DNA from: Schmidtea nova
Taxonomy: Eukaryota
Direction: 5' to 3'
Assembly: GCA_044892505.1 (NCBI GenBank)
Contig: CM097883.1
Coordinates: 228,966,001-229,030,000, forward strand
DNA: 64,000 nt
Part shown: positions 40,790 through 64,000 of the stretch, in pieces
Position numbering within the stretch: position 1 is the first letter of the stretch
Layout: every line of letters starts with the position of its first letter
Notes under the pieces: generated by a model
The model's input: the letters and a program-made list of their open reading frames with translations, nothing else
Told to the model about the DNA's origin: nothing
The model's database searches: none
Program-made: the position numbers and the translations under genes

Positions 40790-42176
40790 GAAAGCTGTAA
40801 GGGGTATTTACCCTACTTTTATATAAACCTGAAATATATACATAAAATCGAATTTAATATCTTAATCTCAATAAGATTTTAATCTATTTTTTTTACGATC
40901 GATGAAACTTTAAATTTCGTATTATAGTAGAATCATTGTGCATAAGATTTACGATTCGGGATATACCAACTAAGCTTGAAATTATTTAATCCTGAATCTG
41001 TTTTTAATTATTCGACATTTCTACATATTTATAAAATAATTCAGCAATTGAGATCCAAATACTGGTAATATCGATATAAAGTGGAATTTAATTAAGATCC
41101 AATTATATACGGTGTATTATATAGATCTGGATTTGGTGAGATATCACTCGGATGTTTAATATGTAAAGCGCAAAATTACTTTAGAATACGACTTTTGAGC
41201 ATACAACCAAAGGGGACGAAATGAATATCACCGAATTCGGCAACTATCAAACAATAAATAAAGATTTTATATAAACATCGAGAATCTAATATCTTTCCGA
41301 CAACTACAATTATTTTACTAGCCATTTCAACACGATTACTATTAATTGGCTGTTGTAATATACTTTTAACGATATGCAACATGATGTTTTCTGGCAATTC
41401 GTTTCCAAGATATAATTCCGATAATAATTATATATGTAAAATTAGATAATATTTATTTCAATATAATACAATAGAACAGACTTTTGACTTAATATATGAT
41501 TGAAATATTTTTAAAAAGATCTAAATTTTTTTTATTTTTAGTGAAAGTCTTTTTAGTCAATTTTTTTTCAAATTCATCTGAATGTAGTTAATGTTTGCAT
41601 CATAATCTTCTATTTTAGGATTTTTTTAGACTTTTGTTGTGTTTTGTCATTAATTTGTTTACTGATGTTTCTCATTACAAATTTTTAATTCACGTCGTGT
41701 GCGGTGTCTGAATTATTCTGTTCTCACTATTATAATTCGTGATCAAAATTTTTATTTGTTATCTCTTAGCAAAAAAATTACGACTTAAGAGTGCTGGTGT
41801 GTTGGTTAGATTGACAACTGAGATCCTTATGATTTTATATGTTAGGGTGATCTCGCCAACATAAAAACATTTCCCCGCTGACACCCATGATGTATCCCTA
41901 ACTACTCATCATGTTGGTGCTGTGTCAACGTTGTGAAATGACAAGGCAGGTGAGCAACCTTTCGGCTACTATTCCCTTGTTTATTCACGGGTCCACCACT
42001 ACCGATAGAAGGTGTCTGTGGCTTTCTTTCGGTCCCACTTATGCTCTTTACTTTGCTCTAGGGTTGATTCAATGTTATTACATCTGCGGCTTTAAATGAA
42101 TCCGAGTTTTAGTTATATTCCATTCTCAGTCATTCCACAAACAAACGAGACAAGTCAAATCATTCATTTTATACAT

Positions 42177-42776
42177 TTATTTGTAGTTCAACAATACAGA
42201 GGGTCGGATTACATTTAGTAGTTCTTGCTCGGATAGACCACTGAGCAAGTCTACCTCTATTCCTACGCGATCTGCATAGGCGCGTCTTTCCCTGCGCTTT
42301 TTCGCTCCTAAGCGATTCCGTCTCTTTGTGCGTTGTGAGCCTGCGGGAATTGTATTTGTCACTGTAGTAGCCGTGGCTATGGTCGATGCATTCTCTGTTT
42401 GGGTGCTCGTAGTCACCGCTATCGTGTCTATCCATCGATTAAAGGTGCTAGCCCTGATTACTGGGCGTAGTTGTTCGGTGATGAAGTCGCGGGTCGATGC
42501 CTTCAAATAATTCGCCAACTCCAATTTCAGGGCTGCAATCTCTCTGGCATGTTCCTCAGCTACTCGTTCTGCCCTGTACCTAGCCTGCAGGATGGACTTA
42601 ACCCGCTCTGGGTTAAACCAGGTAGTCTTAATCCGCTGATGCTCCTCATTCAGCTGCCTTAATCGATTCTCCAGCACCCGTGCGCGCGCCTTGTGTTCTC
42701 GCGCCTCTTGCTTGAAGTCTCTGCCCTTGGGTTCCGTCATGTCTGTAAATATATCATTAATGTTAGTATATGTCAT
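42177..42776 (-). CDS. LTR-region ORF, 199 aa: coiled coil, Thr-rich linker, Arg/Lys-rich basic stretch
   Basis: Intact ORF with QRTKRRNRLGAKKRRERR; AATAAA overlaps the stop codon. Confidence 0.7.
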   Translation of the reverse strand: MTYTNINDIFTDMTEPKGRDFKQEAREHKARARVLENRLRQLNEEHQRIKTTWFNPERVKSILQARYRAERVAEEHAREIAALKLELANYLKASTRDFITEQLRPVIRASTFNRWIDTIAVTTSTQTENASTIATATTVTNTIPAGSQRTKRRNRLGAKKRRERRAYADRVGIEVDLLSGLSEQELLNVIRPSVLLNYK

Positions 42777-42931
42777 GTGTCTGATTTTTCGGTCATCCTA
42801 TCGTCATTAAACAACTCCGTTCTATCATCATATTATTTCCATGCGCTCGAAAGAAAAACAAAACAAGACCGTTTTCACACAAATACATATATTTTGTAAC
42901 TACGACAATCATTCTCTCTCGGCTGCGACCA

Positions 42932-43567
42932 TCAACTGAAGGCCCTCAAGTCCTGATCGGCAGGATGCTCGTCGCGACGAATTCCATTCTCCCAATACAT
43001 TTCTGGGGCTGGGGTCCAACTCAGCTTATCTTTGTAGATAAACACCTCCCAGAGGCGAAGCTCCTCGGACTCGGGGTGTTGTTCCACGGACACACTTCCT
43101 GGTGCATTGGAATAAGTGAAGACTTCCTCAGTGTAGCGACACCGAGGCCTGTCTAGCAGCAGGTATCCTAATTGGAAAAGAGCCCTTCCGGTCATCATTC
43201 CATTGCTCAATACCCAGCGGGGTCGTCTCTGCTCGTCGAGAAATTGGAAGAACCATCTATCGGTCCTTGGTTCGGCAGGGTCCATGGTGGACATCCAATC
43301 GGGGTCTCCTTCCCATCGTAATTGTATCGTGAAGGCGCAAGCCGGAACATCTGCGGCTGCACTCATATGGTGTCTTGTCCACCGCCGTAGGTGGCGACGC
43401 GCAGTTTCGCTAATTCTGCGTGGGGCTTCCATTTCTCCCTCGATGGTAAGGATCCTCCTTGGCCGGACGACGGAACGGATGCGTCGTGGTTTCCGGACGA
43501 CATAATCTTCCATTTTCATCTGTCGATAGGTGCTCGGACTTCTTTGATATTCTTCGGTCTTTATCAT
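42932..43567 (-). CDS. LTR-region ORF, 211 aa: Arg-rich N-terminus, Trp-rich globular C-terminus
   Basis: Intact ORF; strong splice acceptor cttcttgtcttcag 4 nt before the ATG. Confidence 0.7.
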   Translation of the reverse strand: MIKTEEYQRSPSTYRQMKMEDYVVRKPRRIRSVVRPRRILTIEGEMEAPRRISETARRHLRRWTRHHMSAAADVPACAFTIQLRWEGDPDWMSTMDPAEPRTDRWFFQFLDEQRRPRWVLSNGMMTGRALFQLGYLLLDRPRCRYTEEVFTYSNAPGSVSVEQHPESEELRLWEVFIYKDKLSWTPAPEMYWENGIRRDEHPADQDLRAFS

Positions 43568-44619
43568 TTTTCTGAAGACAAGAAGATGTGATTGTGATGA
43601 ATTTGTTAGGTGCGTGCAATTATTTATAATCGGCGACCTACTCGACTCAAGAGTAAGACTCTGTGGGTTGCCGTTGGTGTTTCAGTGTTAGATCGGTTCG
43701 ATGTTCAAGATAGTGGGTAGGTTGTATATTATCGTCATGTGGTTGAGTGTATTCACTATGTCAAGTTGCTTAACTGATTTGGCCACGCAAAAAATTCAGT
43801 TCAGTTTATGACAATCTGTATTCATTTATGATGATCACTTGATCATTTATTATATTAGAATGTCATCATTTCATAGACCATTTTGGTTTATATCTACAGC
43901 AATCATACTCACTCGCATCTCAGGTGTTATCTCCATACCTAATTTTCAATTAACAATGGTCACATCATCCGGGGAACATGTTCGACCCCTTACTCAGGTT
44001 AATTGGGTACAGATTGTGCTTGTATTATATTTCGTGGGACTATCCTTTGTACCCTTCGTGAGGCGTATTTATGTTGGGGCATCCTGTGGATTCATGGTTT
44101 TACTCCGACGCTAGCACTGTCAGCCTCTGAACTCACCTGCCTCATGTAGTGTATATCTCCATACTAACCCTTTGCACCAAACCGTCGTTACTCTACTTGA
44201 CTTCACGAACGCGGAACACTTCCTCGTCGATCAACCCGTCTTTTATGTAAACTCCTTTACTCGATGTTGTCGGGACAGATGATACGCCCTTCAATTACTT
44301 CTACCCATCCTGGGGTTATGATGACCTGAGATATCCGATGTGCCCTTCCCCCTTCCGCTTGTTAAATATTTAGAACACTTATGGTCCCGCCGCATCAGCA
44401 CCTCACAACCTAAAGATTGTGTTGCGCTGAGAGGCCCCAAGAATCCGTCAGGCTGTTAGGCCTCCGGAAAACCTTATAGATTTTATTATGGTTAGCAATT
44501 ATAATTATGAGGGTTTAAAAGACTAATACAACTTGAATTACCTTTTATTTATTTCCAAATTGGTTTCACAATGTTCTCAGTAGTCACAAACAATTCACCC
44601 TTGGTAAAGATAACATTGT

Positions 44620-44680
44620 CAAATACTGATTTGACTTCAGTATTTATACTCCACCGGTGTTGTTGGTTAGCCAATCAGCA
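44620..44680 (-). promoter_or_regulatory. Candidate LTR promoter
   Basis: ATTGG/CCAAT box 44671-44675, TATAAATA 44648-44641, TCAGT initiator-like 44629-44625 (TATA-Inr spacing slightly short). Confidence 0.5.
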
Positions 44681-45049
44681 TCGAGTATGTGTGTATGTTT
44701 GCTTCATTATTTTGTGTTGTCGGCTTTTTGCTGCCTAACTTAACTTGCCGATTTGTTTGGTTAATCATGCGGTAAGTTTTTCTTAGTCATCAATTTATTT
44801 TATTTTATTTTTGTTTTAGGTCTTTGGTGACATCCGCCCACGCGCTGTCATATTCCAATTTTATCTGCTTCGCATGAGTAAGTTTTGAAGATTTTTGTTG
44901 TTTTGATTAATATTTTATTTCTTTTAGATGTTGCCGCCTATTTTGTTACGCTTTGGTGTTGGTAATTTATTTTGTTGTTATTCTGTTGTAAATTTATTTT
45001 ATTGATTGTATATTATTTTCAGATGCTGCTCGATTTGGCTGGCCCAACA

Positions 45050-45085
45050 TCACTCGGGGTCCCCTTAAAATTGCGTCCCGCAATT
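45050..45085 (-). promoter_or_regulatory. Hairpin plus short polypurine tract preceding the LTR
   Basis: Minus strand AATTGCG-GGA-CGCAATT TTAAGGGGACCCCGAGTGA|TGTTGGG; the PPT is atypically interrupted. Confidence 0.55.
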
Positions 45086-45254
45086 ACATGCATACACTTA
45101 CATCAACATACATAAAAAGTTCGTGACAGAACTTACATGCAAAACCACATAAGGTGGTAGCTTTCATACTCATTTATACACAAAGTCACACATTGTCATT
45201 GTCATGTTTATATTGTTACACAGTTCAATGTTTCTGGCTCATAGGGGTTGATTT

Positions 45255-45779
45255 TCAGGTCCTTTCACTTGTTGACTGCATTTCGTATCGGGCTTGGATT
45301 TGTCGTAGATGGCTTCTCATTCTTTGTTGGGTTTTTGCTTCTCTTTTGGCACATCTACACATTATCATTTGTTGTTGTTTGAGGCTTCTGATTCGATATA
45401 GGGTATAGGTAATCACGATGATCAGGATGATTGTTAATATTGTCATTGTGACTATTCCGACGATGATCCATCTGTTTCGGATTTCGGATTCGATTTGGGT
45501 TTGACCTTTGATTGGCTTTAGCTGATCTTGGAATGTTTTATGGATTTCTCGGATCTTCTCGATTTGATCGAATAGGGTTTGTAAGGGTTTGCGATGATCA
45601 TGACTGATTCGCATTTGTCGGATTAATTGTTTCAAGTCTTCTCTGACTTCATTTAGTTGTTTTTCGATCTCCTGGGATATTTCATTTGACAGGGTTCTTT
45701 GAATTTCGGTTGTCGAACAGTTCATGATTGTTATGGTTAACATAGTTGTTAGGATTGGTAGGGTTTTGAGCCAGTTCAT
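45255..45779 (-). CDS. Accessory type I membrane protein, 174 aa
   Basis: Signal-peptide-like N-terminus, heptad-rich ectodomain, TM WIIVGIVTMTILTIILIIVITYTLY, basic Cys-containing tail. Confidence 0.75.
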   Translation of the reverse strand: MNWLKTLPILTTMLTITIMNCSTTEIQRTLSNEISQEIEKQLNEVREDLKQLIRQMRISHDHRKPLQTLFDQIEKIREIHKTFQDQLKPIKGQTQIESEIRNRWIIVGIVTMTILTIILIIVITYTLYRIRSLKQQQMIMCRCAKREAKTQQRMRSHLRQIQARYEMQSTSERT

Positions 45780-45852
45780 TTCTGATTATTCTACTGATTA
45801 ATACCTGTTACATCGATTTGTACATTTTTACACACGGATTTTTCGCCTCTTT

Positions 45853-47025
45853 TTACACATCCGTCTCCTCTGGTTCATGAAACCCTTCATCTTGGAGCTC
45901 CATTGGTGGTGGTGGTATAAACGGTAACCACACCACTCTGCTTCTCCACATTGCAATTTCATCTTGATACGTTCGAGAGATTTGTATCTCTTCATCTAAC
46001 AGATACTCCATATAGTCTGATTGTTCGCTCAGAGTTTCAATTTGTCTTTCCATCTCTTCCACTTTTCTCTTCATGTCTTCTACTTCTGTTGGTTCGGTTT
46101 CTACTTCTGTGGTTTCTTTCTCTGCTTTCAGGGTTATTATCTGCTGTTTCAGTTCCTCATTTTCTTTCGTCAAATTCGTTATATTCTCCTCGTAAGCTCG
46201 GTTTGATTCCGCATGTCTTTCCTTCACAGATTTCAGTTCCATTTTCTTTTGGGTCACCACCCCTTGATAACCATTTACATCTCTTTCCAGACTTTCTTTT
46301 TCCCTGATCAACTTTTGTCTTTCCGCTTCTTCTTTTTGTCTAATGCCTCGCATTTCTTCATTTATCATCTGTATTTGCCATTGCGTTTTCTTTAGTTCCT
46401 TTGCCTGTTCTCGAATAATTCGCTGTCGTTTTCGACTCCATTCCTTGTTTGTCTGTTCTTGTCGTTTTCTCTGTTCCAGTTCCTCTTTCAATTCGTCTAT
46501 CTCTTGATACAATTTCCAATCTTCGCTGTATGCTGTCTTTCTGATTATCTCTTTGGCTTCTTTATGCACTCGTTTCGACTCCATCTTCCAATGTCTCGCT
46601 TGAGCCTTGATTGCTAGTATTTTTACCTCCATCTTTTCCTCTTGTTTCTCCTGCTCTTCTCTTCGCGTTTTCATCATATTCCGGTAGTGTTCAGCTTGTT
46701 TTCTCATCAACTGATAGACCTCTTCTATCTTCAGTCGACTTCGTACATTCGTTCCTTTTAGCTTCTCTATTTGTGTTGTCAGTTGTACTATCTCTTTATT
46801 CACTTCCTCGAGTTCTAGTTGGTATAACTCCATTCGTCTCTCGCATTTTAGTTTCTCGTAAAAATTGTTCGTCATCACTTCGTGTAATTCTCTGGTTCTT
46901 TGTTCTACTTCCACTTTACATCTCCTTTCGATTTCTCTTTCGATTTCTCTTTCTATTGCTTCTTGTTCGTTTGACATCTCGTTTCTCGTTTCATCTTCGA
47001 TTACATGTGCATTTGCGTTTTCCAT
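45853..47025 (-). CDS. Accessory long coiled-coil protein, 390 aa
   Basis: E/K/R/Q-rich heptads throughout; ends ...PPPPMELQDEGFHEPEETDV. Confidence 0.8.
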   Translation of the reverse strand: MENANAHVIEDETRNEMSNEQEAIEREIEREIERRCKVEVEQRTRELHEVMTNNFYEKLKCERRMELYQLELEEVNKEIVQLTTQIEKLKGTNVRSRLKIEEVYQLMRKQAEHYRNMMKTRREEQEKQEEKMEVKILAIKAQARHWKMESKRVHKEAKEIIRKTAYSEDWKLYQEIDELKEELEQRKRQEQTNKEWSRKRQRIIREQAKELKKTQWQIQMINEEMRGIRQKEEAERQKLIREKESLERDVNGYQGVVTQKKMELKSVKERHAESNRAYEENITNLTKENEELKQQIITLKAEKETTEVETEPTEVEDMKRKVEEMERQIETLSEQSDYMEYLLDEEIQISRTYQDEIAMWRSRVVWLPFIPPPPMELQDEGFHEPEETDV

Positions 47026-47114
47026 TCTGTAATTTACAAATTTACACTTGTTATACTATACGTTTATTGTTGTCGTCGATTTTTACACTTTATTTACAGG
47101 GTCGTTCACTCTGA

Positions 47115-48527
47115 CTACTCTAACCATCCTTTCGTTGACTTCGTGTTCATCACTGTTGTACTTGCTTTCTTTTCGATCTCCAACTCTACATATAAGTTGT
47201 CGTCGTACAACATCTCCCACATTGTTTGGTGTGGTATGAATTTTGGTTCTCCAGTCGCTAATGAACATTCTGTGGTTGGTCTTTTGTAAGCTTCGTGCTT
47301 ACCATCAATTTTGAATACTCTCGCTATTGTTTCTTTCGAGTTTTTCACTCTCATTATAGCCTTTGTTTCTAGTGGCCATTCTAATATGTCGTCGTAACCA
47401 CCTTTACACAACGCAAAGAATAATGACACATGCGTTTCTTTTCCTGATCCATCTCCATTTGGATAAATTCTCATCCGGACTTTGTATCCGTTTTTCCACA
47501 GATAAAATGGTGGACTTGTTACCGACACTTGACTTCCTGCTTTTGCTGCTGCGAACTTGTCGTTGAAGTTCTTGATTTTCCATACATATGGTGCAACAGG
47601 TAAACTCTCGATATCCTCTGTATCTCGTATCCACATTTGGTGTCGTACATTTACTTCCTTTACTAATGTCTCTATGACTTTGATTTTCTCCATCATTTTC
47701 TCTCTGGTGAGCTCGAATTGTTCTCTTGTTTCTAGTAATAACTCCGTCATTATTCTCTGAGATTCGATTTCTTTTCCCAGCTTCTGTATGGTTTGTTCCA
47801 TTCCGTTCAAATTTGCTGTTAACATCTCGGCGTGTTGTACTGTTTCCGTTTCCAAATGCTCTTTCATCTCTTTGCTCGTTTTCTTTACTACACATCCTTG
47901 TTTACTCCATACGCACTTTCTTGGTCTTGATTCGCATTGTTCCCAATGTTCTCTCAACATCACTTCTTCTCCGGTTCCGCAATTACTTGGACAAATTCCT
48001 CGGAATTTTCCGCACACTTTTTCTTCTGCTACGTTGAGATGTTCTGTTTCGATTACTTCTCTCGTCTCTCTTTGTTCGCAGTATTGACACTCTATTATCT
48101 CTGCTTTGCACTCGTCCTTGTGATTTTTCGACTGCTTGATGGTTATCGTCTGTTGACACTTTTCACATATCGCTTTCTTGTTTTCGCATTTCTCCAGATG
48201 TTGTCTTAGCTCGATTATTTGTCCTTTCCATTCACATGGTTGGTTTATACACTCTGTTTTTATCTTCCAGATCTCCTTTTGTATTGCTTTGTCTGGTTTT
48301 GTTTCGTTGATCAGTAGTTTATCGTCACACTCTGGACACTTTCTTGTCTCACTTTCACTGATTATTTGCAATATACACTTGGTGCACATCCTGCATCCAC
48401 ATTCCGTTTGCCTCGGTTTTAACAGTAGATTTTTACACTTTACACACGTCACATTTACTCCCCATTGTCGATTTTCTCCTCTTAGAGTTTCGATCGTTTG
48501 GTAATCTGCTTCGCTTTCTGCTCTCAT
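47115..48527 (-). CDS. Intronless TRAF-family protein (RING, TRAF Zn fingers, coiled coil, MATH), 470 aa
   Basis: RING CVKC..PRQTECGCRMCTKC..CPEC; CINQPCEWKG; MATH YVWKIKNF..SPPFY..GYKVRMRIYPNGDGSGKETHVSLFFALCKGGYDDILEWP. Confidence 0.95.
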   Translation of the reverse strand: MRAESEADYQTIETLRGENRQWGVNVTCVKCKNLLLKPRQTECGCRMCTKCILQIISESETRKCPECDDKLLINETKPDKAIQKEIWKIKTECINQPCEWKGQIIELRQHLEKCENKKAICEKCQQTITIKQSKNHKDECKAEIIECQYCEQRETREVIETEHLNVAEEKVCGKFRGICPSNCGTGEEVMLREHWEQCESRPRKCVWSKQGCVVKKTSKEMKEHLETETVQHAEMLTANLNGMEQTIQKLGKEIESQRIMTELLLETREQFELTREKMMEKIKVIETLVKEVNVRHQMWIRDTEDIESLPVAPYVWKIKNFNDKFAAAKAGSQVSVTSPPFYLWKNGYKVRMRIYPNGDGSGKETHVSLFFALCKGGYDDILEWPLETKAIMRVKNSKETIARVFKIDGKHEAYKRPTTECSLATGEPKFIPHQTMWEMLYDDNLYVELEIEKKASTTVMNTKSTKGWLE

Positions 48528-48617
48528 TCTACAACAATATTTACATCAATTTCCCCATATTTTTGATTTTTTCTGGTTCTTTATTTACACGTATTTACAC
48601 AGTTTTCCGCTTATTCA

Positions 48618-48968
48618 CTATACATCCTCAGTTGAATCTGGCTCTGGATACACGTCTATCTCATTTACAATCCAGCTCGTCCAACTATCCGGTATTTCTT
48701 CCTCTTCATGTCTCGTTAATCGGTCAATTTCCTCTGCTTGCCAGTTGTTCACTTCATTTAATGTTCGGTTCTCGTTCTGTAATTCGTTTATCTGTATTTG
48801 TTGGATCTCGATTTTGTTCATTGCTTCGCAATTACAGTTATAACTCTCGGTTAATAATTGCGTTTTTGCCGTCAACTGGCTCTGTAATTCATTTACTGTT
48901 CTGGCTAGCAGGTCACATTGTACTTTCCATCTTGTCATCGTTGACATCTCGATATTTTCTTGGTTCAT
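48618..48968 (-). CDS. Accessory short coiled-coil protein, 116 aa
   Basis: Heptad repeat plus acidic Trp-containing tail ending EPDSTEDV. Confidence 0.65.
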   Translation of the reverse strand: MNQENIEMSTMTRWKVQCDLLARTVNELQSQLTAKTQLLTESYNCNCEAMNKIEIQQIQINELQNENRTLNEVNNWQAEEIDRLTRHEEEEIPDSWTSWIVNEIDVYPEPDSTEDV

Positions 48969-49091
48969 TGTTTTTCTAGATTATATACATCATTCTCTTT
49001 TTTCTGTTTTTATGTTTTATAATATTTATACCCATACGTATACGGTTATGCATTGGTTTTTACACTATTATTTACACTCATATTCCACCCT

Positions 49092-56408: not shown

Positions 56409-56690
56409 CAGGTCAGTTCCAATAATACATGGTACACTCAGCGATGGTATTACACGATGTACGTGTTGATCTCTGCACCTCGATGCTTAATTTTTACAAA
56501 CCATCTTCCGGCTACTTCTACTGTCTCTTGACTGCACGCGATTACATGTACGTTCGTCTTCTCAATTTCTCCTTGGTTTTTCTCGGGTATATAGTTAATG
56601 TCGATTGCCGAAATATTCGCGCCTGTATCGATCATTGCTTCGATTTCTCTTCCATTTATTTCTATGGTTGTTGTTAAAATCGGTCCCATA
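56370..56690 (-). other. Retroviral-type aspartic protease split across the ORF1/ORF2 junction
   Basis: IEINGREIEAMIDTGANIS (DTG at 56621-56629) in ORF1; C-terminal IPSLSVPCIIGTDL in the pol frame. Confidence 0.92.
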
Positions 56691-59600
56691 TTTGTGGACA
56701 TAACTGCTATCGTGTGCGTGTCTTCTAACGAGTTTACACTTCCACCTCGTTTTACTTTGCATCCCTCTGGAATTATCGGGTATATACTTGTCATCGGCAT
56801 CATCTGCATCATATTCGGCTTCGCTTTGTATATCGGTTCGTTATACATTGACTGAGGTGGAGCACTGTATCTCCAATTCTCAACTGCACTCTTTTCGTTA
56901 TACTGTGGAATCTGGTTTATATTCGCTTGTCCTCCTCGATCGTCATCGTCATCGTCGTCGTTACTTGAATCATCCTGCGTTCGATATCCTCTCACTCTTT
57001 CCCATAATCCTTTCCTTTCTTTCTTTAGTTGTCTTCTTGCTTGCTCGTCTTGCATTATCTTTTTGAATTTCCTTCCGACATCTTCGTTTGTTCCTTTCAT
57101 TTTTGCAAGTATCTTCAACAACCTCTTTATTCGATGTATGTCTTTTGAGTGTCCGTGTAACACCATCGTTTTCGCAAGGAATGGTAAAAATCCTACTACC
57201 ATTTTCCAATTCACTTTCTTTTCTCTCTTGTAGATGTCGAAACACGCTAACATTTGCGTTATTATCACTCTGACGATTTGTATTATCAATATAACACCCA
57301 GTATTCCCGCCATCATTTGTCCAAATATCAGGAATCTTCCCCACATTGCCTTCATCATATTTTCTGTGGCTTTCTTGAAATGTGCCGGTGACAACAACAG
57401 TTCGTAATTCGGTCCTTCTCGATAATTCGTTCCTCCCGTTATCGTTACGATATTTGACAGTAATGCTTCTCTTCTTGCCGGGAATAATATATTCTGCCTT
57501 GCTGCTTCCAGATCTTTTGGACTATAGATTCCGTTGTTTGAGACATCTACGTCACTGAACTGTCTATCCTTTGACAACTGCATTAGCTCAAATTCTCTTG
57601 GTGCTAATACTTCAGTTCTTCCTGGGAACATAACCCATTTGCCATCTGGCTTCTGATAAAGCGGTCCGTACGCGTTACTACAGTTGAATGGATTTGGTTC
57701 AAAACTTGGTGGATTGATGATTCTCGTCACCGGTTGAACATATCGTACTTTTCCTTTGTAATCGATTTCTAGTTCGTTTGTACATTGTCCAGGTTTCAAC
57801 TGCGTTGTTGCTGCTAGCGATGCGTGTGTCTTTTCACAAATGTATACATACATTGCCTCTCCAACCACTCTTCCGAAATGTCCTTCTCTCAGTGGTAATA
57901 ACGGCATCGCGCTATCTGGATTCGTAATCGCTACGGCCAACTTTGTCTTTAGTATTTCCCGATTCAGTATACAATCGTTGTTTATCAGATCATAATACAC
58001 TTTTTGCAATGAGGCTTGTCCTCTATGGAATAAGAAATCCATTTTATTATTCACATACAAGTGTAACTTGATATCCATTGTGTCGATCTTGGGTTTCGCA
58101 TTCGGCACTTCCTGCTTTGACACGTATATTCCTGGATAATTTGTTTCGTATACTGTTGTACTGCACTTAAGGGTTGCTTTCCCTTTTATGAATCTCATTC
58201 CCACATCCTGATTTGTGGTTATCAACACTGTTGGTGTGGCTCTCATCTCTATTCGTTTTTCTCTATGATCTGGTCTCAATTGTCTTTTGTTCTCTAAAGC
58301 TTCTTTGAGATGTTTTGCTCTAGCTTTGTCATCATCGTCCTCTTCCTGGAACGTTTTTCCTTGAATTTCGTCGAACTTTGCTCCTTGTAGCAGTTGTAAT
58401 TGACACTCGTTCACTTTTGGTTTGTATACCAATGTTGACATTCCCGTTTGACACATGCTCCTGTCAATTTTACACATGGATAACGTTTTCATTTCTCCTG
58501 TGGTCGGTTCGAAGAATGCTTCGTAGCTTTTCAGTTCGACTATATACGTATCCATTACCACTAAGTTGGTTGCAGGTACTCCAAATATCGGGTAGGTTTC
58601 TCCTTGACAATATCCTTCTCCTCCCGTAATCCGTCCTGCTACATAATACGTCTGCTGTAACATCATTCCTGGTTTTCCTTTTATCTTGATTTTATCTCTC
58701 GTTGTTACTTCTCCATGCTTGAATAATGCTTCACAGTCTTCTCCTTGCAACACGATTGGTTCTCTTTCTGTTCCTGGCATGACAATTGCTGAATAATGTC
58801 CTCTACCACAATAGAATGCGAATCTCGTCTTTTGTACTTTGCATTCATTCACCATTGTCTTTATGAGTTCTGCCTCTTGATACACGTGGTACCATTGTTC
58901 CTTTTTAATCTCTTTTAACTCTACTGGAGTTGCATCTTTGCATTGCTCCGTACCTCTCAATGAGTACTTTTCTCCTAACTTCATTTGATCACAATCAAAT
59001 ACTTCGAACGTTGTTACACCCTCTGTGCTTAACAACCATACTAGCATCATCATGATTATCGAGTTTAAATTCAACGTCGATCTTCCGTTTCCTTGCATCG
59101 TTTGTCTATTCTCCATTTCTCTCAATACTCCTTCGAGTTTCTTTCTCATCACGTTAGACCCTTCTTTTGTCTGGTTCTCTTTTATGAACTTTTCCCATCC
59201 TCCTTTCCTGAGGATATATGGTTCAATTTCTTTCTCGATAATCATCGCCGTATTTTTAATATGTCTTCCCATCGGACTTGACTTCGGACTTCCTCGGCTT
59301 AGCGTTAGTAAATTGTATATCGTATACGAGATTGCTACCAGATATTTGCTGTCCGTTTCTGCTCCGTTAAGTAGCCTTTTTATCAACATCGTGGTTCCTT
59401 GCCAATCCAGATGATTCGATTTTGTTTTTGCCTTTATCAATTCTGGCATAATCGGTGCTATTGCATTGTGTAGCATCCTTGCCTTTGTACTAGGTTCGTT
59501 TATCCGCCACAAATTCTTTAATTCCGGGTCAATTATTGCTAACACATCCATTATCGTTTTGGTGAGCCATTCTTCTCCTTGGCAGACTTGATTCTCTTCT

Positions 59601-62600
59601 TTTCCTCTGATCTCTGCGATTTTATCCAGTTTCTTCAAGCAAATCTCCCATTGCTCTTGTCTCCTTTCTTCCCTTGTTTTTGGAATTGTTGTTGCTGGAT
59701 CTATCTTTGGTCTTCCTCTTGGTCGTTTTTCCATTCCAGTTCCGGTTTCCACAAATCTCGTTGCTCTTCCCGTTTCTTCTGTAACATCTCTTCCTTCGTT
59801 CGCTCGCTGTTCTAACCATCTTTCCATTTCTTGAGTAAACTGTGGTTGTTCTTGCTCGTCTTCTGAATCGTTTACCATTTCTATGACTACCTCCTGTTCC
59901 ACTCCTTGATCGTCGATTTCTGCTGGTGACGTTATTGGCATCTCTATTATTCTGTCAAAAATATTCGCCGTTGGTTTTTGAGTCAACTTCGTTAGTTCTT
60001 CTATCGCCTCATCACTATCTGTTAGTATCTCATCGACGTCATACGCTTCTGGCGGTGTTCTCTCTCTCGTTTTTATTGGTGTTGTCCTTGCTTGTCCCGA
60101 ACTTGTTCCTGGGGTCATTGTTGACTTCATCGGACTTGGTGTACTCATGCTTCCTTTCGCTTTCTTTTCCTCTTTAAACTTCAGTGGTTGACCCACTATT
60201 TGTGCCACTGTTAGCGTATTCATTAGATCCAATTGCACTGGTGTCAGCCAGATTTCCAAATTGTTATCCAACGATCGTCCTTGATGTTGCAGGTGGAATG
60301 GTAGTTCGTACATCAGTTTCTCTTTAACACTTTTCACTTTTTCGGTTAGCATCACCCAAAACTCTTCTTTTCTCTGATTCGGATACATTATCCTCAAATG
60401 TATTTTCTGTGGCGTTTCCTCCGCAAACTCTTTGTTTCTCCACTTTTTTATTACATCGTCTAGTTGCTCTGGACACCACTCGTTTACTCTCTTGTATTCT
60501 GCTATCGCTTTAGCTACTTTTCGCAAGTTCGTCATGTCTTCTCCATTTGAGATTATGAATTGTGCTAAGCCTTTTATTGTTTGTCTTTTCCCCCGAGTAT
60601 TTCCTCTCAACAGCTCGATCAATTCACTCGTTTTCTGTTTCTCCAATTCTGCCCATATTACTGCATTTTCTGGTCCGTCTAAGTCCGTTGGTAATATCCT
60701 CCTTGTTACCATACATATCCGTTTCGTATTCCGTTCATATCTGTCTTCTCCTTCCGGATCTTCTTCATACACGCCTCTTTTCACTTTCCAACATTTCTCT
60801 TTGTTATCCCATTGTTTCTCTACTGGCGTCAATCGTCGTCTGTTAAGATCCAATTCTCCCAATATTGTCTCCCATTCTGGCTTCATCTGCCAGTTCCGAT
60901 AGATTTCTACTATCTGCCTCAACTTACGCATAACGTCCTCTTGTCGTTTCTTTCTCCTTTCTTCATCTTTTGTAGTTATCCTCGGCACATCATCCATTCT
61001 GATGACGTGTATTGTCTGATAATTATCCCATATGCCGATTTTATACGCTCGTCTTTCGTCACGTTCGTTCAGTAGATGTTCTTTGTATTTTATAGCGATG
61101 TCATCCTCGAATTCATCTTCCCGTTCTCGTTGTAATATCGTCTCATTGATGACATCTACTATTTCTCCCACTTTACTATCTGGTATTACCTCAATTTGTT
61201 TTGTCTCTTCGTTTGGTAATCTCACGGTAATCTTCAGATCTGATACCTCTCCTCGTTTAAACATTTCTTTCCCCATCTTGGCGATTAACTTATCCGTTTT
61301 GAAATTTGAGTGTCTCGTTTGACTGGTGTCTCGTATATTCTCGATACACTGTTTCAAATTCTCATACTCGCTTTTCGTCAATTCCTTTCGATGTTTCTTG
61401 ATTTGTTGGATGATCTGTTCTATCATCGTATTCAAATTCTCCGCCAAGATTCTTTCTTTTGCCTCTACCAACTGAGGTTTTATTCTCATCTCGTAACACG
61501 TATTCGCTTCTTTGACGATTCCTTGTAAGTTCTCTTCCTTTTTGGTGTTGCATATAGATAGCGTTGTTATTTCTCCTGGCCATATGCCTGTGTCTATCAT
61601 ATGCGTTCCTTTTCTCACCAATCCGTTTTCCGAATATATGAATTTGTCTTTGTACGAGCTTCCCAATCTGTCTTCAACCCATCGGTAAATTCCATCCGTC
61701 ATTGGGTTCCTTATCCAGATTCTCGGTGAACACTCGTTTATCCATATTTGTATTACGTATTCGTTGAGTGGTTCTTTCAATAACTTCTCTATGAACTCCT
61801 GTATTACCCTCACTTCTCTTTCTTGTAACCACTCTTTATACTTCATTTGCCATACTGCTCGTATAAACTTTCGGTATCGTTTCCTGTCGATAAACTCCTC
61901 GTTATGGATTACTTCTAACGCATTATCCATCAGCTTCTGAATTTCGTCTTCCTTTACTGACATCGTTTCTATCGTCTCGACTACTTCCATCTTTTTATCC
62001 ACGTTTTCCGGTTCCTTTAGCATGTCTCCTGCCAGACTGCTAACTTCGCTGTCGTCTTCTTCATCTGACAACTCTTGTCTTGGGTGTCTCAGCATCCCAA
62101 TATGTGCGGTTGGCCTCGCTTCGTTTTTGCTAGCTTCTTGTATTAGTTCATTCTCGTTTCCTGTTACTTCAGCTTTTCCCATTCTTTTCTCCAACTCGTC
62201 TATTTCTTCCAACCGTCTTCGTCTTATTTTTCCCTTGAATATTCGACTGATCCGGGTTTGATGTTTCACTGGTGGTGGGATTTTCTCCGGTTCCACCTCT
62301 CTGATGATCATCACGTTTATTTTTGTCTCCGTTACTCCCATATCTTCCCATATATCAGTCATCTTTAACTTCACTTCCGGTAAATCTTCTGTTTGTAGGA
62401 AGGCTTCTCTGGGCAGTTTCGTCACTCCCGGAATCATCTCGTTTACTTTATTGAACAATCTTCCTACTTCTTCTTTTACATCGTATTTGAATCGCCACAC
62501 GTGATCATTCGGCATGATCACCAACATTCCTCTTTGTTTGACTCTCACTTCCTCTTCTTGATTCGTTTCTTTTTCTGTTTCTTTTTCTGTTTCTGTTTCT

Positions 62601-63985
62601 TTTTCTACTTCTTCCACTTTTTGATTCTGCTCTGTAGTTTCTACTTCCTGATTCACTTCTTCTTGTTTCTGCTCTTCATTTCTTTTCTCTTTAACTTCTA
62701 ACTCGTCTGACTCATCCTGCTGCTTCTCTTCCATCATTGCTCGCATCATGTTGATCCTTGGATTTCCCTTTTTTAACTGTTGTAACCGTTGCTGTCTGAC
62801 TTGTTCTTCCTCTCGTCGTATTCTGGCCCATTCTTGATTATGTTTCTGTTGACTCTCTCTGTTTTCTCTTTCGGCCTCAGCTTCTATTAACTGGATCATG
62901 TTTATCTTTGGTTGAGCAGCTTGCTGGCTTCCCTTTGCCATGCTTTCGATTATCTCGTGTAATCTGGATACCTCCTGTCTCAACTTAGCTTCTTTCATAC
63001 TAGCTTCGTTTGCACTGCTGTTTGGGTTGTTCCGTTGTTGACCTTGATTCCCATAGCTTGGTCGATTCCCGTAATTCGGTCTATTTCCACTGTTTGCCCA
63101 ACTTCTCTGTTGATTACAGTCTTTTGACATGTGTCCGGTTTTTCCACATGTGTAACACGTTTTCCCATAACATCGATTCTCTGAGTGACCTTTTTGTCCA
63201 CACAGTTTGCAGGCTACATTCTGAAAACAATCTTGTTGCCAATGTCCGTTCTTTCCACACGTCTGACATTGCCTATTCTGCCTGTCATTGTAACTGTTTC
63301 CTCCATTCGTGTTTACTGTGATATATCCATTATTTTTCCTCGCTGGCGGTTCTTTGAACAATCTCTGCGAATGGGGGATACTTTGATTCATGTTTCTTTT
63401 TCCTTGTTCTTCGTCTTCTGTTGTTTTTCCCATTACCGCCGTAATTCTCATGTCATTCATTGCCATATGCAATTCGAATAGGTTGGCTGCTTCCAACGCT
63501 TCATCTACTGTTTTACATCCTTTGCATCCCACTTGTGCTCTGATGTCAGGTCTCCTGAGACCTCGTACGAATAACGCTGTCATCAATTCTTCGTCTACTG
63601 GGCTTCCTCTATTGAATGCCAGTTTCGCCAACTTTCTTAATTCGCTTGCGTACACCGCATTTGACTCGTTTCTCCTTTGTTTTCTTGCTGAGAACTCATC
63701 TAACGCTTCGTTCAACACTTTATTTATCCCAAACGTCTGTTGGAAGAACTCCTTGATTGCTTCCCACGTTCTGGGTGGATTACTTCCCGATCTCTTCTCA
63801 ATATACAGATCCAATGCGCTATCTTTCAAGTATAGCGGGATTCGATTTGCTAACGTTTCTGCACTCCATCCGCATATATCCACGAATATGCCAAATTCCT
63901 TTAGAAACGTGTCCAATCTACTGGCGTCTCCATTGAATGGTTCGCCCTTGAATTTTTCTCTCAGATCCTCTCTGTGTTCACTCAT
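56450..63985 (-). CDS. gag: ORF1, 2511 aa: Gag, cargo domains, glycoprotein (env), aspartic protease N-terminal part
   Basis: Retrotransposon gag (PFNGD..FLKEF..W..LYLKDSALDLY..W..KQRRNES..Y..EL), three CCHC knuckles at 63116-63268, and MIDTGANIS near the C-terminus. Confidence 0.95.
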   Translation of the reverse strand: MSEHREDLREKFKGEPFNGDASRLDTFLKEFGIFVDICGWSAETLANRIPLYLKDSALDLYIEKRSGSNPPRTWEAIKEFFQQTFGINKVLNEALDEFSARKQRRNESNAVYASELRKLAKLAFNRGSPVDEELMTALFVRGLRRPDIRAQVGCKGCKTVDEALEAANLFELHMAMNDMRITAVMGKTTEDEEQGKRNMNQSIPHSQRLFKEPPARKNNGYITVNTNGGNSYNDRQNRQCQTCGKNGHWQQDCFQNVACKLCGQKGHSENRCYGKTCYTCGKTGHMSKDCNQQRSWANSGNRPNYGNRPSYGNQGQQRNNPNSSANEASMKEAKLRQEVSRLHEIIESMAKGSQQAAQPKINMIQLIEAEAERENRESQQKHNQEWARIRREEEQVRQQRLQQLKKGNPRINMMRAMMEEKQQDESDELEVKEKRNEEQKQEEVNQEVETTEQNQKVEEVEKETETEKETEKETNQEEEVRVKQRGMLVIMPNDHVWRFKYDVKEEVGRLFNKVNEMIPGVTKLPREAFLQTEDLPEVKLKMTDIWEDMGVTETKINVMIIREVEPEKIPPPVKHQTRISRIFKGKIRRRRLEEIDELEKRMGKAEVTGNENELIQEASKNEARPTAHIGMLRHPRQELSDEEDDSEVSSLAGDMLKEPENVDKKMEVVETIETMSVKEDEIQKLMDNALEVIHNEEFIDRKRYRKFIRAVWQMKYKEWLQEREVRVIQEFIEKLLKEPLNEYVIQIWINECSPRIWIRNPMTDGIYRWVEDRLGSSYKDKFIYSENGLVRKGTHMIDTGIWPGEITTLSICNTKKEENLQGIVKEANTCYEMRIKPQLVEAKERILAENLNTMIEQIIQQIKKHRKELTKSEYENLKQCIENIRDTSQTRHSNFKTDKLIAKMGKEMFKRGEVSDLKITVRLPNEETKQIEVIPDSKVGEIVDVINETILQREREDEFEDDIAIKYKEHLLNERDERRAYKIGIWDNYQTIHVIRMDDVPRITTKDEERRKKRQEDVMRKLRQIVEIYRNWQMKPEWETILGELDLNRRRLTPVEKQWDNKEKCWKVKRGVYEEDPEGEDRYERNTKRICMVTRRILPTDLDGPENAVIWAELEKQKTSELIELLRGNTRGKRQTIKGLAQFIISNGEDMTNLRKVAKAIAEYKRVNEWCPEQLDDVIKKWRNKEFAEETPQKIHLRIMYPNQRKEEFWVMLTEKVKSVKEKLMYELPFHLQHQGRSLDNNLEIWLTPVQLDLMNTLTVAQIVGQPLKFKEEKKAKGSMSTPSPMKSTMTPGTSSGQARTTPIKTRERTPPEAYDVDEILTDSDEAIEELTKLTQKPTANIFDRIIEMPITSPAEIDDQGVEQEVVIEMVNDSEDEQEQPQFTQEMERWLEQRANEGRDVTEETGRATRFVETGTGMEKRPRGRPKIDPATTIPKTREERRQEQWEICLKKLDKIAEIRGKEENQVCQGEEWLTKTIMDVLAIIDPELKNLWRINEPSTKARMLHNAIAPIMPELIKAKTKSNHLDWQGTTMLIKRLLNGAETDSKYLVAISYTIYNLLTLSRGSPKSSPMGRHIKNTAMIIEKEIEPYILRKGGWEKFIKENQTKEGSNVMRKKLEGVLREMENRQTMQGNGRSTLNLNSIIMMMLVWLLSTEGVTTFEVFDCDQMKLGEKYSLRGTEQCKDATPVELKEIKKEQWYHVYQEAELIKTMVNECKVQKTRFAFYCGRGHYSAIVMPGTEREPIVLQGEDCEALFKHGEVTTRDKIKIKGKPGMMLQQTYYVAGRITGGEGYCQGETYPIFGVPATNLVVMDTYIVELKSYEAFFEPTTGEMKTLSMCKIDRSMCQTGMSTLVYKPKVNECQLQLLQGAKFDEIQGKTFQEEDDDDKARAKHLKEALENKRQLRPDHREKRIEMRATPTVLITTNQDVGMRFIKGKATLKCSTTVYETNYPGIYVSKQEVPNAKPKIDTMDIKLHLYVNNKMDFLFHRGQASLQKVYYDLINNDCILNREILKTKLAVAITNPDSAMPLLPLREGHFGRVVGEAMYVYICEKTHASLAATTQLKPGQCTNELEIDYKGKVRYVQPVTRIINPPSFEPNPFNCSNAYGPLYQKPDGKWVMFPGRTEVLAPREFELMQLSKDRQFSDVDVSNNGIYSPKDLEAARQNILFPARREALLSNIVTITGGTNYREGPNYELLLSPAHFKKATENMMKAMWGRFLIFGQMMAGILGVILIIQIVRVIITQMLACFDIYKREKKVNWKMVVGFLPFLAKTMVLHGHSKDIHRIKRLLKILAKMKGTNEDVGRKFKKIMQDEQARRQLKKERKGLWERVRGYRTQDDSSNDDDDDDDRGGQANINQIPQYNEKSAVENWRYSAPPQSMYNEPIYKAKPNMMQMMPMTSIYPIIPEGCKVKRGGSVNSLEDTHTIAVMSTNMGPILTTTIEINGREIEAMIDTGANISAIDINYIPEKNQGEIEKTNVHVIACSQETVEVAGRWFVKIKHRGAEINTYIV
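57100..59070 (-). other. env: Chuvirus-like (Jingchuvirales-type) glycoprotein embedded in ORF1
   Basis: Internal signal peptide SIIMMMLVWLLSTEG, then FDC..SL..C, CKV..R..YCG..HYS, AG..G.CQG, YVNNK..LY..L..C..NR..LK..LA..NP, GEA.Y..C, C..EL..Y..QPVTRII, then WGRFLIFGQMMAGILG TM. This Cys and motif spacing is typical of chuvirus G. Confidence 0.85.
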
Positions 63986-64000
63986 CCCGATTCCACTGTC

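What the first reader, a model, noticed from the sequence alone, without database searches (positions are those of the whole stretch)
41840..64000. Giant virus-like Gypsy retroelement with an envelope gene and an apoptosis/innate-immunity cargo kit
Seen: more than 22 kb on one strand, with near-intact ORFs of 2511 and 2438 aa plus six accessory ORFs. Besides gag/pol the element carries a chuvirus-type glycoprotein, a full TRAF, Bcl-2-like, ubiquitin-like, ankyrin and FN3-like modules. Established: typical Gypsy elements are 5-10 kb; giant Gypsy elements (Burro) are known from the planarian Schmidtea; Bcl-2, ankyrin and TRAF-pathway mimics are host-manipulation tools of large DNA viruses. Inference: this may be an infectious, cell-to-cell transmissible retroelement that suppresses death and immune signalling, a complex-retrovirus analogue that arose independently in an invertebrate.
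Basis: partly seen in the sequence, partly recalled or inferred. Interest (0 to 1): 0.95.

Follow-up and report, generated by a model that had tools for sequence, protein, structure and literature searches.

The report
Known planarian giant Burro retroelement
This is a young, almost intact copy of a Burro-type giant Gypsy retroelement, a kind already described in planarian flatworms with the same in-frame envelope gene and host-like TRAF and ankyrin cargo, so it is real and striking but not new.

Summary
On the minus strand of 41840-64000 lie two ORFs of 2511 and 2438 aa and six smaller ORFs, far beyond chance. Confirmed domains:
- gag with three CCHC knuckles
- an in-frame Monjiviricetes-type fusion glycoprotein (E 3e-68)
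- protease, then Ty3-like RT, RNase H and integrase (E 4.5e-116 to Ty3)
- ankyrin repeats
- a complete stand-alone TRAF

FN3-like modules get moderate fold-level support. The Bcl-2-like and ubiquitin-like modules could not be confirmed in this copy.

This architecture is already published for Burro/GYPSM1 elements of Schmidtea and Girardia (Jurka 2007 and Grohme 2018, both as cited in Arkhipova and Yushenova 2019, PMC6431247). That paper also states the provirus and host-tinkering hypothesis.

The polyprotein gene of this copy is broken once, by a frameshift, and has no stops. The six accessory ORFs are open. The 5' LTR lies outside the window. No tool reached other genomic copies.

What may be lineage-specific:
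- TRAF as a separate gene after pol
- four FN3-like modules with membrane segments at the end of pol
- two ORFs inside the putative 3.2 kb LTR

Infectivity is untested.

The parts
41840..64000 (-). The element as far as the window holds it. Its 3' end is at 41840. The 5' UTR and 5' LTR lie beyond 64000.
   Evidence: Composition step at about 41840. The terminal bases end in CA. ORFs are continuous on one strand. The gag frame is still open at the window edge.
49092..63985 (-). Giant polyprotein gene (gag, spacer modules, env, PR, dUTPase-like, RT, RH, IN, ankyrin, FN3-like array). It is broken once by a frameshift and has no in-frame stops. It reads as two ORFs of 2511 and 2438 aa, 4949 aa together.
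   Evidence: No canonical slippery heptamer where both frames are open. Published Burro polyproteins are single ORFs of 4873 and 5140 aa.
63113..63838 (-). Gag: Retrotrans_gag domain followed by three CCHC zinc knuckles.
   Evidence: Pfam PF03732 E 5e-6 and PF00098 E 5e-12. Retroviral nucleocapsid hits in PDB. Three knuckle patterns counted.
60776..62296 (-). Spacer region colinear with the only relative found, P0006 (32-34% identity). It contains the candidate ubiquitin-like stretch.
   Evidence: Only a weak RA_2 hit, E 0.14. In P0006 a MATH domain follows this region, and that domain is absent here.
59051..59788 (-). All-helical region just upstream of env. Burro elements are reported to carry a BCL2-like motif at this position. 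Not confirmed here.
   Evidence: No Pfam or PDB sequence hit. The AF2 model is helical but has pLDDT 47. Foldseek gives no significant hit, and Bcl-xL/Bcl-2 appear only at ranks 32-36 with E about 2.
57158..59074 (-). Envelope module. It starts with a run of Met codons and a signal-like hydrophobic stretch. The ectodomain has 14 Cys. A transmembrane anchor follows. The module is in frame with gag and PR.
   Evidence: Pfam PF24664 Monjiviricetes_fusion, E 2.9e-68, profile 4-579 of 653. Hydropathy and Cys counts.
55854..56671 (-). Retroviral aspartic protease followed by a dUTPase-like stretch.
   Evidence: RVP E 1e-6. The two best PDB sequence hits of the downstream stretch are dUTPases, weakly (E 0.051 and 0.54).
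53346..55736 (-). Reverse transcriptase, RNase H and integrase of Ty3/Gypsy type.
   Evidence: Pfam RVT_1 1e-36, RT_RNaseH 1e-38, Integrase_H2C2 9e-21, rve 2e-11. Ty3 Gag-Pol 7q5b E 4.5e-116.
51708..53105 (-). Two blocks of ankyrin repeats fused in frame behind integrase.
   Evidence: Pfam Ank_2 E 3.7e-22 and related families. Ankyrin and DARPin hits in PDB.
49278..51026 (-). C-terminal array of four modules of about 90 aa with invariant Cys-Trp, Cys, Cys, interspersed with three hydrophobic segments. FN3-like beta-sandwich, probably membrane-associated.
   Evidence: Alignment A1. Hydropathy. AF2 pLDDT 64, pTM 0.57, six strands. Foldseek PDB hits are nearly all FN3 domains.
48618..48968 (-). 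Accessory ORF of 116 aa, with only weak sub-threshold Pfam hits, mostly to helical or coiled-coil families.
47115..48527 (-). Accessory ORF of 470 aa: a complete TRAF (RING, TRAF zinc fingers, coiled coil, MATH).
   Evidence: Pfam MATH_2 4.7e-27, TRAF-mep_MATH 2e-25, zf-TRAF and TRAF3_RING below cut-off. Aligns to TRAF2 over 91-94% at 25-26% identity. MATH is 35% identical to coelacanth TRAF2 and 32% to P0006.
45853..47025 (-). Accessory ORF of 390 aa, rich in charged residues and coiled-coil-like to the eye.
   Evidence: Longer than any open frame in the shuffles.
45255..45779 (-). Accessory ORF of 174 aa with one strong transmembrane segment and a hydrophobic N-terminus seen by eye.
41840..45049 (-). 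Terminal block, a putative 3' LTR of about 3.2 kb. The bounds are inferred. It has imperfect terminal inverted repeats, a short purine tract before it, TATA-like and AATAAA motifs, and higher GC (0.46-0.56). It contains two open frames, 42932-43567 (211 aa) and 42177-42776 (199 aa).
   Evidence: No second LTR and no internal repeat in the window. The open frames exceed 300 shuffles. No family hits. The size fits published Burro LTRs.

Best explanation
The region is one copy of a Burro-type giant Ty3/Gypsy (Metaviridae-like) endogenous retroelement in an AT-rich, planarian-like genome. It is cut at the window edge just upstream of gag.

Shown here:
- One giant gene encodes gag, a long spacer, a Monjiviricetes-type fusion glycoprotein with its own signal-like start and membrane anchor, protease, a dUTPase-like stretch, RT, RNase H, integrase, ankyrin repeats and a membrane-associated array of FN3-like modules.
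- Four tightly packed accessory ORFs follow. One is a complete TRAF.
- A block of about 3.2 kb comes last. It is best read as the 3' LTR and holds two more open frames.

Inferred from what is known of retroelements and of these protein families:
- The element is transcribed from its 5' LTR.
- The polyprotein is cut by its own protease into capsid/nucleocapsid, enzymes and cargo proteins.
- The glycoprotein enters the membrane either through its internal signal or from a spliced message starting at its Met run.
- The TRAF, the ankyrin repeats and perhaps a Bcl-2-like module act on host death, ubiquitin and TNFR/Toll-type signalling in the expressing cell.

This copy is very young but has one frameshift in the polyprotein gene. 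By ordinary translation it cannot make its own Pol and would depend on other copies.
For: - Domain calls: 3, 4, 15, 16.
- Ty3 Gag-Pol as the best solved relative.
- One continuous frame for gag and env, and one for pol, ankyrin and the FN3-like array.
- Uniform composition over 45-64 kb, distinct from the flank.
- ORFs beyond 300 shuffles.
- An independent relative, P0006, is colinear with the spacer and carries a MATH domain in the chain.
- Literature describing the same architecture, size, in-frame env, separate TRAF ORF in Girardia, thousands of copies, and expression with piRNA/SMEDWI-2 control of BURRO1: PMC6431247 and PMC8532177.
- AT richness above 70% fits Schmidtea.
- No stop in 18.3 kb of coding sequence gives a 95% bound of about 0.3% neutral divergence.
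Against: - Species and Burro family could not be identified. None of the element's eight ORFs (the two long ORFs and the six accessory ORFs) is in the protein collection as an exact sequence.
- The only relative found is 32-34% identical.
- BIR was not found.
- Bcl-2-like and ubiquitin-like modules were not confirmed.
- The LTR bounds rest on one end and on motifs only.
- Every functional statement about the cargo is inference.
Confidence: 0.9

Rival explanations
1. The change of frame between the two long ORFs is a programmed ribosomal frameshift, as in many retroviruses. On this reading the copy is intact.
For: The two frames overlap by a short stretch and both are otherwise free of stops. 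Gag-pro-pol frameshifting is common in retroelements (general knowledge).
Against: There is no canonical slippery heptamer in the overlap. A conserved enzymatic domain runs on from one frame into the other. Published Burro polyproteins are single ORFs of 4873 and 5140 aa.
Confidence: 0.12
2. The region is an assembly chimera or a nest of unrelated insertions: an ordinary Gypsy plus an endogenous RNA-virus glycoprotein plus host genes.
For: The terminal block 41840-45049 differs in GC from the rest. The size is far above ordinary Gypsy elements.
Against: The env is in the same open frame as gag. The ankyrin and FN3-like parts are in the same open frame as integrase. There are no internal LTRs or repeats. 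Composition is uniform over 45-64 kb. The same order of parts is published for thousands of copies.
Confidence: 0.03
3. One reading: the family is at present an infectious retrovirus analogue that passes between cells and uses its cargo to block death and immune signalling.
For: The glycoprotein module is complete, with a signal-like start, 14 Cys and an anchor. The coding sequence is nearly undecayed. BURRO1 is reported as abundant, expressed in differentiated tissues and held down by SMEDWI-2. The provirus idea is already in print.
Against: No tool or paper at hand shows particles or transfer. Intact env genes also persist in elements that spread only within the germ line or stem cells. This copy has a broken polyprotein gene. 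The Bcl-2-like part is unconfirmed here.
Confidence: 0.2
4. The block 41840-45049 is not an LTR. It would be an internal region with two more accessory genes followed by a short LTR, or a different element lying next to this one.
For: It holds two open frames longer than chance. Its GC is higher than in the rest of the element. It has internal TATA-like and AATAAA motifs. No second LTR is available for comparison.
Against: The imperfect terminal inverted repeats (TGTTGGG ... CCCTAACA) and a short purine tract frame exactly this block. The size agrees with published Burro LTRs, since the total exceeds 30 kb against an internal part of up to 25 kb. The flank turns AT-rich only at 41840.
Confidence: 0.3

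Closest known systems
Burro-1/GYPSM1 and Burro-2 to -4 of Schmidtea mediterranea (Jurka 2007 and Grohme et al. 2018, as cited in Arkhipova and Yushenova 2019, PMC6431247)
   Same: - Giant Gypsy-like element with a polyprotein of about 4.9k aa.
- gag with three CCHC knuckles.
- env in frame between gag and PR, of mononegavirus glycoprotein type.
- dUTPase-like stretch between PR and RT.
- Ankyrin repeats after IN and TRAF/MATH cargo.
- LTRs of kilobase size in an AT-rich planarian genome.
   Different: - In Burro-1 the MATH_TRAF_C domain is part of the polyprotein. Here it is missing from that position, and a complete TRAF is a separate ORF after pol.
- BIR was not found here.
- Bcl-2-like and Ubl motifs were not confirmed with the tools at hand.
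- The only relative retrieved is 32-34% identical, so this is not Burro-1 itself if that relative is of Burro-1 type.
Burro-like element of Girardia (Dugesia) tigrina (PMC6431247)
   Same: [quoted passage not shown] The env is in frame.
   Different: - That element is reported with two CCHC knuckles, an 'upstream' accessory ORF and a midasin-like region.
- Here there are three knuckles and the TRAF ORF lies downstream of pol.
- No midasin-like hit was seen.
Insect errantiviruses (gypsy, ZAM and relatives)
   Same: Ty3/Gypsy pol plus an envelope gene captured from another virus.
   Different: By general knowledge, errantivirus env is a separate ORF after pol, related to the baculovirus F protein, and the elements are 7-8 kb without host-like cargo. 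Here env is in frame between gag and PR and matches the Monjiviricetes family.
Mosquito retrotransposon that captured a Jingchuvirales glycoprotein (PMC7642597, PMC10084718; abstracts)
   Same: An LTR retroelement that acquired a glycoprotein from negative-strand RNA viruses of the same class.
   Different: The host and the retroelement lineage differ. I did not read those papers beyond the abstracts. No giant polyprotein or TRAF/ankyrin cargo is mentioned there.
Complex retroviruses and foamy-like fish endogenous retroviruses with accessory ORFs (as discussed in PMC6431247)
   Same: Accessory ORFs lie downstream of pol, with possible open frames in the LTR. In both cases host pathways are thought to be manipulated.
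   Different: Pol here is closest to Ty3 and not to Retroviridae. The cargo is largely fused into the polyprotein. The size is larger.

Membership tests
Burro-type giant Gypsy elements of planarians | Ty3/Gypsy-type pol with the order PR-RT-RH-IN | tested here: met
   (Ty3 Gag-Pol E 4.5e-116).
Burro-type giant Gypsy elements of planarians | Giant internal region (up to 25 kb) with one polyprotein of about 4.9-5.1k aa | tested here: met
   At least 19 kb of internal sequence lies in the window. The two frames sum to 4949 aa against the published 4873 and 5140 aa. The gene is broken once by a frameshift.
Burro-type giant Gypsy elements of planarians | N-terminal Gag with Retrotrans_gag and two or three CCHC knuckles | tested here: met
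   (three knuckles).
Burro-type giant Gypsy elements of planarians | env in frame between gag and PR, similar to mononegavirus fusion glycoproteins | tested here: met
   PF24664 E 2.9e-68 inside the gag-to-PR open frame.
Burro-type giant Gypsy elements of planarians | MATH/TRAF cargo, either inside the polyprotein or as an accessory ORF | tested here: met
   Stand-alone TRAF ORF. The in-chain MATH is absent where P0006 has one.
Burro-type giant Gypsy elements of planarians | Ankyrin repeats behind integrase | tested here: met
Burro-type giant Gypsy elements of planarians | BCL2-like motif upstream of env | tested here: inconclusive
   No Pfam or PDB sequence hit. The helical model has pLDDT 47 and no significant fold match.
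Burro-type giant Gypsy elements of planarians | Ubi2/SUMO-like motif in the spacer | tested here: inconclusive
   Only RA_2, E 0.14. Nothing in PDB. The published call was made with HHpred, which is not available here.
Burro-type giant Gypsy elements of planarians | BIR domain | tested here: not met
   No BIR hit in any ORF at the thresholds used. It was reported for GYPSM1, not necessarily for every family.
Burro-type giant Gypsy elements of planarians | dUTPase-like domain between PR and RT | tested here: inconclusive
   The top two PDB sequence hits are dUTPases, but at E 0.051 and 0.54. No Pfam hit.
Burro-type giant Gypsy elements of planarians | Kilobase-long LTRs at both ends | not testable with these tools
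   Only the 3' end is in the window. The putative 3.2 kb block is inferred from its termini. No route to the flank or to other copies.
Burro-type giant Gypsy elements of planarians | Host is a dugesiid planarian, and the sequence is related to a Burro reference | not testable with these tools
   No planarian genome or Repbase entry is within reach. The AT-rich flank fits. One relative of 32-34% identity.
Errantiviruses | env as a separate ORF downstream of pol, of baculovirus F type | tested here: not met
   env lies between gag and PR in the same frame and matches Monjiviricetes_fusion.
Retroviridae (complex retroviruses) | Pol closest to retroviral RT/IN | tested here: not met
   Ty3 scores far above the retroviral and foamy-virus enzymes.

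The most novel reading that the evidence does not exclude
This copy may stand for a Burro lineage whose particular layout is not spelled out in the papers I could read:
- the TRAF module has left the polyprotein and become a complete free-standing TRAF gene after pol;
- the pol end carries a membrane-associated array of four FN3-like modules;
- the LTR-like terminal block encodes two arginine-rich proteins.

Together these would form a set of membrane and regulatory accessory proteins that parallels complex retroviruses more closely than Burro-1 does.
Probability: 0.25. Interest if true: 0.5.

Novelty: already known. Interest (0 to 1): 0.3.

Why it matters
Burro elements are the largest LTR retroelements known. 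They are the only ones with an envelope gene fused in frame between gag and pol, and they carry host-like regulators of cell death and immune signalling. A copy this young and this complete is useful descriptive material. It can help ask how such a polyprotein is expressed, how cargo modules move between the polyprotein and separate genes, and whether the glycoprotein is kept under selection. The finding adds no new kind of element. The architecture and the provirus and host-tinkering hypothesis have been in print since 2007-2019.

Tried and rejected
**Searches that led nowhere**
- Exact look-up of all eight ORFs in the 15-billion protein collection found none. Look-ups of encoding contigs were therefore pointless, and no other genomic copy could be compared.
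- Word-based homologue searches with the gag-env spacer and with the env module found nothing.
- The TRAF search found only cellular TRAF2-like proteins.
- The exhaustive phmmer search of the spacer found a single relative.
- Rfam and tRNA scans of the window found nothing.
- Self-comparison of the 3' block for LTR-like repeats found nothing.

**Tests that stayed inconclusive**
- Bcl-2 by Pfam, by PDB sequence, and by AF2 plus Foldseek.
- The BFVD fold search of the FN3-like module gave only generic beta-sandwich matches.

**Literature**
- Grohme et al. 2018 is not held in the library.

**Readings rejected**
- Programmed frameshift: no slippery heptamer.
- Chimera: the cargo shares open frames with gag and pol.

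- No scan of viral collections with env and no fetching of Jingchuvirales or mononegavirus comparators.
- No read-through of the two frames as one protein.
- No consensus of any kind.
- No filling of the N runs.

- To test for a programmed frameshift I read the junction of the two frames and worked out its place, and the kind of change involved, in my reasoning.
Full report

Yes. On the minus strand between 41840 and the window end there are two ORFs of exactly 2511 and 2438 aa. Six smaller ORFs of 116, 470, 390, 174, 211 and 199 aa lie on the same strand, tightly packed. GC is 0.38-0.46 against about 0.27 in the 40 kb to the left, and the change is sharp near 41840. In 300 dinucleotide-preserving shuffles, no shuffle of either region reached the observed length of its second-longest open frame. 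The two regions tested were the accessory block and the terminal block. Four runs of N lie elsewhere in the window. I left them alone. Some repeat families are artefacts of these runs.

**2. What is there?**

*First long ORF.*
- It starts with a Retrotrans_gag domain and three CCHC knuckles.
- About 1,340 residues follow with no family hit.
- Next comes a Monjiviricetes-type viral fusion glycoprotein. Pfam PF24664 scores E 2.9e-68 and covers profile positions 4-579 of 653.
- This module starts with a run of Met codons and a signal-like hydrophobic stretch. Its ectodomain has 14 Cys, and a strong transmembrane anchor follows.
- After it comes a retroviral aspartic protease.

*Second long ORF.*
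- It carries RT, RNase H and integrase. Ty3 Gag-Pol is by far the best solved relative (E 4.5e-116).
- Two blocks of ankyrin repeats follow.
- The C-terminal part of about 650 residues has four repeated modules of about 90 aa with invariant Cys-Trp, Cys, Cys. Three hydrophobic segments are interspersed.
- A model of one module, built with the four copies as its alignment, has pLDDT 64. Its PDB fold matches are almost all FN3 domains (TM 0.5-0.58, E 0.06-0.5). 'FN3-like' is therefore moderately supported.
- Between protease and RT, the two best PDB sequence hits are dUTPases, though only weakly (E 0.051 and 0.54).

*Accessory ORFs.*
- The 470-aa ORF is a complete TRAF with RING, TRAF zinc finger, coiled coil and MATH. 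It aligns to vertebrate TRAF2 over 91-94% of its length at 25-26% identity.
- The other accessory ORFs have no significant family hit. By eye the 116-aa and 390-aa products look coiled-coil-like (the 116-aa ORF has only sub-threshold Pfam hits), and the 174-aa product has one strong transmembrane segment.

**3. What was not confirmed?**

- Bcl-2-like. The helical region just upstream of env has no Pfam or PDB sequence hit. Its single-sequence model is too poor to judge (pLDDT 47). Foldseek gave no significant match, and Bcl-xL/Bcl-2 appear only at ranks 32-36 with E about 2.
- Ubiquitin-like. Only a weak RA_2 hit, E 0.14.
- BIR was not found.
- 'Chuvirus-type' is more specific than the data allow. 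The Pfam family spans the whole class, and the word-based search with the env module returned nothing.

**4. State of the copy**

The polyprotein gene is broken once, by a frameshift. It has no in-frame stop, and all six accessory ORFs are open. I read the frame change as a mutation rather than a programmed shift, for three reasons:
- A conserved domain continues from one frame into the other.
- The stretch where both frames are open has no canonical slippery heptamer.
- Published Burro polyproteins are single ORFs of 4873 and 5140 aa. The two frames here sum to 4949 aa.

I did not read the two frames through as one protein. Each was searched apart.

No stop in 18.3 kb of coding sequence puts a 95% bound of about 0.3% on neutral divergence. 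The insertion is therefore very young or still under selection.

**5. The ends**

The 3' end is at 41840 and ends in CA. The block 41840-45049 is framed by imperfect inverted termini. A short purine tract precedes it. It holds TATA-like and AATAAA motifs. At 3.2 kb it fits published Burro LTR sizes.

This is an inference. The window holds no second LTR and no internal repeat. The block contains two arginine-rich open frames that are longer than chance, which I cannot explain further. The 5' UTR and 5' LTR lie beyond 64000, and the gag frame is still open at the window edge.

**6. Relatives**

- None of the eight ORFs is in the protein collection as an exact sequence, so no other genomic copy could be fetched.
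- An exhaustive phmmer search with 1,200 residues of the spacer found one protein, P0006 (UniParc, 882 aa, 34% identity).
- P0006 is colinear with the spacer. At a point where this element has only about 20 residues, P0006 has a MATH domain inside the chain.
- So in this lineage the TRAF module is not in the polyprotein. It is a free-standing complete gene.
- Its MATH domain is about as far from that of P0006 (32%) as from coelacanth TRAF2 (35%). One capture or two cannot be told apart.

**7. Comparison with what is known**

Arkhipova and Yushenova 2019 (PMC6431247) summarise Jurka 2007 and Grohme et al. 2018 and describe Burro/GYPSM1 of Schmidtea mediterranea as follows:
- Internal regions up to 25 kb and totals above 30 kb.
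- Thousands of copies.
- A 4873-aa polyprotein with gag and three CCHC knuckles.
- MATH_TRAF_C, Ubi2/SUMO-like and BCL2-like motifs.
- An env in frame between gag and pol that hits mononegavirus fusion glycoproteins.
- PR, dUTPase-like, RT, RH and IN.
- BIR and ankyrin repeats.

They also describe a Girardia tigrina relative whose TRAF domain sits in an accessory ORF. They state the hypothesis that Burro elements are integrated proviruses that meddle with apoptosis and ubiquitination.

BURRO1 is reported as abundant, expressed in differentiated tissue and held down by SMEDWI-2 (PMC8532177). Capture of a Jingchuvirales glycoprotein by a mosquito retrotransposon is a published parallel.

The element is not an errantivirus, because the env type and position differ. 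It is not a retrovirus in the strict sense, because its pol is closest to Ty3.

**8. How it most likely works**

*Shown:* the parts list above.

*Inferred:*
- Transcription starts from the 5' LTR.
- A giant polyprotein is translated and cut by its own protease.
- The glycoprotein enters the membrane through its internal signal, or is translated from a spliced message starting at its Met run.
- The accessory ORFs are expressed from spliced or reinitiated messages.
- TRAF, the ankyrin repeats and perhaps a Bcl-2-like module modulate host TNFR/Toll-type signalling, ubiquitination and cell death.
- This copy would need Pol from other copies.

Whether the family moves between cells is unknown.

**9. 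Verdict**

Possible lineage-specific points deserve a note, not a headline:
- the stand-alone TRAF after pol
- the FN3-like membrane array
- the open frames in the LTR-like block

Interest 0.3.

**10. Declared slips**

- I read the junction of the two frames and located it, and considered the kind of change, in my reasoning.

Noticed in passing
window 5132-5344, 5637-5881, 6807-6962, 15211-15339: Four runs of N (743 bases in all). They were left untouched. Repeat families D1 and I1-I3 lie on them and are N-against-N artefacts.
   Followed up: partly
window 6055-6471 (-): An ORF of 138 aa with a GIY-YIG nuclease domain (Pfam E 1.7e-5), lying between N runs. It may be a remnant of a Penelope-like retroelement.
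   Followed up: no
window 32760-33101 (-): An ORF of 113 aa with a fragment of a DDE_3 transposase domain (E 1.9e-4, below the Pfam cut-off). Probably a decayed Tc1/mariner-type transposon.
   Followed up: no
window 16263-18050: A tandem array with a 49-base period, about 36 copies (family D2).
   Followed up: no
window 15074-15210, 24561-24697, 5392-5514: Three copies of a near-perfect hairpin of about 137 bases (arms of 58-65 nt, 91-98% complementary; I6, I7 and I21). MITE-like.
   Followed up: no
window 42177-42776 and 42932-43567 (-): Two arginine-rich open frames (199 and 211 aa) inside the putative 3' LTR. They are longer than in 300 shuffles and have no family hit. A TATA-like motif lies about 55 bases upstream of the second one.
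   Followed up: partly
window about 59030-59074 (-): The env module begins with a run of Met codons and a signal-like hydrophobic stretch although it is in frame with gag. This would suit separate translation from a spliced message.
   Followed up: partly
P0006 (UniParc UPI00060E6093) against window 60776-62296 (-): The only relative found has a MATH domain inside the chain where this element has about 20 residues. The closest MATH to the stand-alone TRAF is a truncated metagenome protein, P0002 (47% over 87 aa).
   Followed up: partly
window 47404-47895 (-): An ORF of 163 aa overlaps the TRAF gene in another frame and has no family hit. Probably chance.
   Followed up: no
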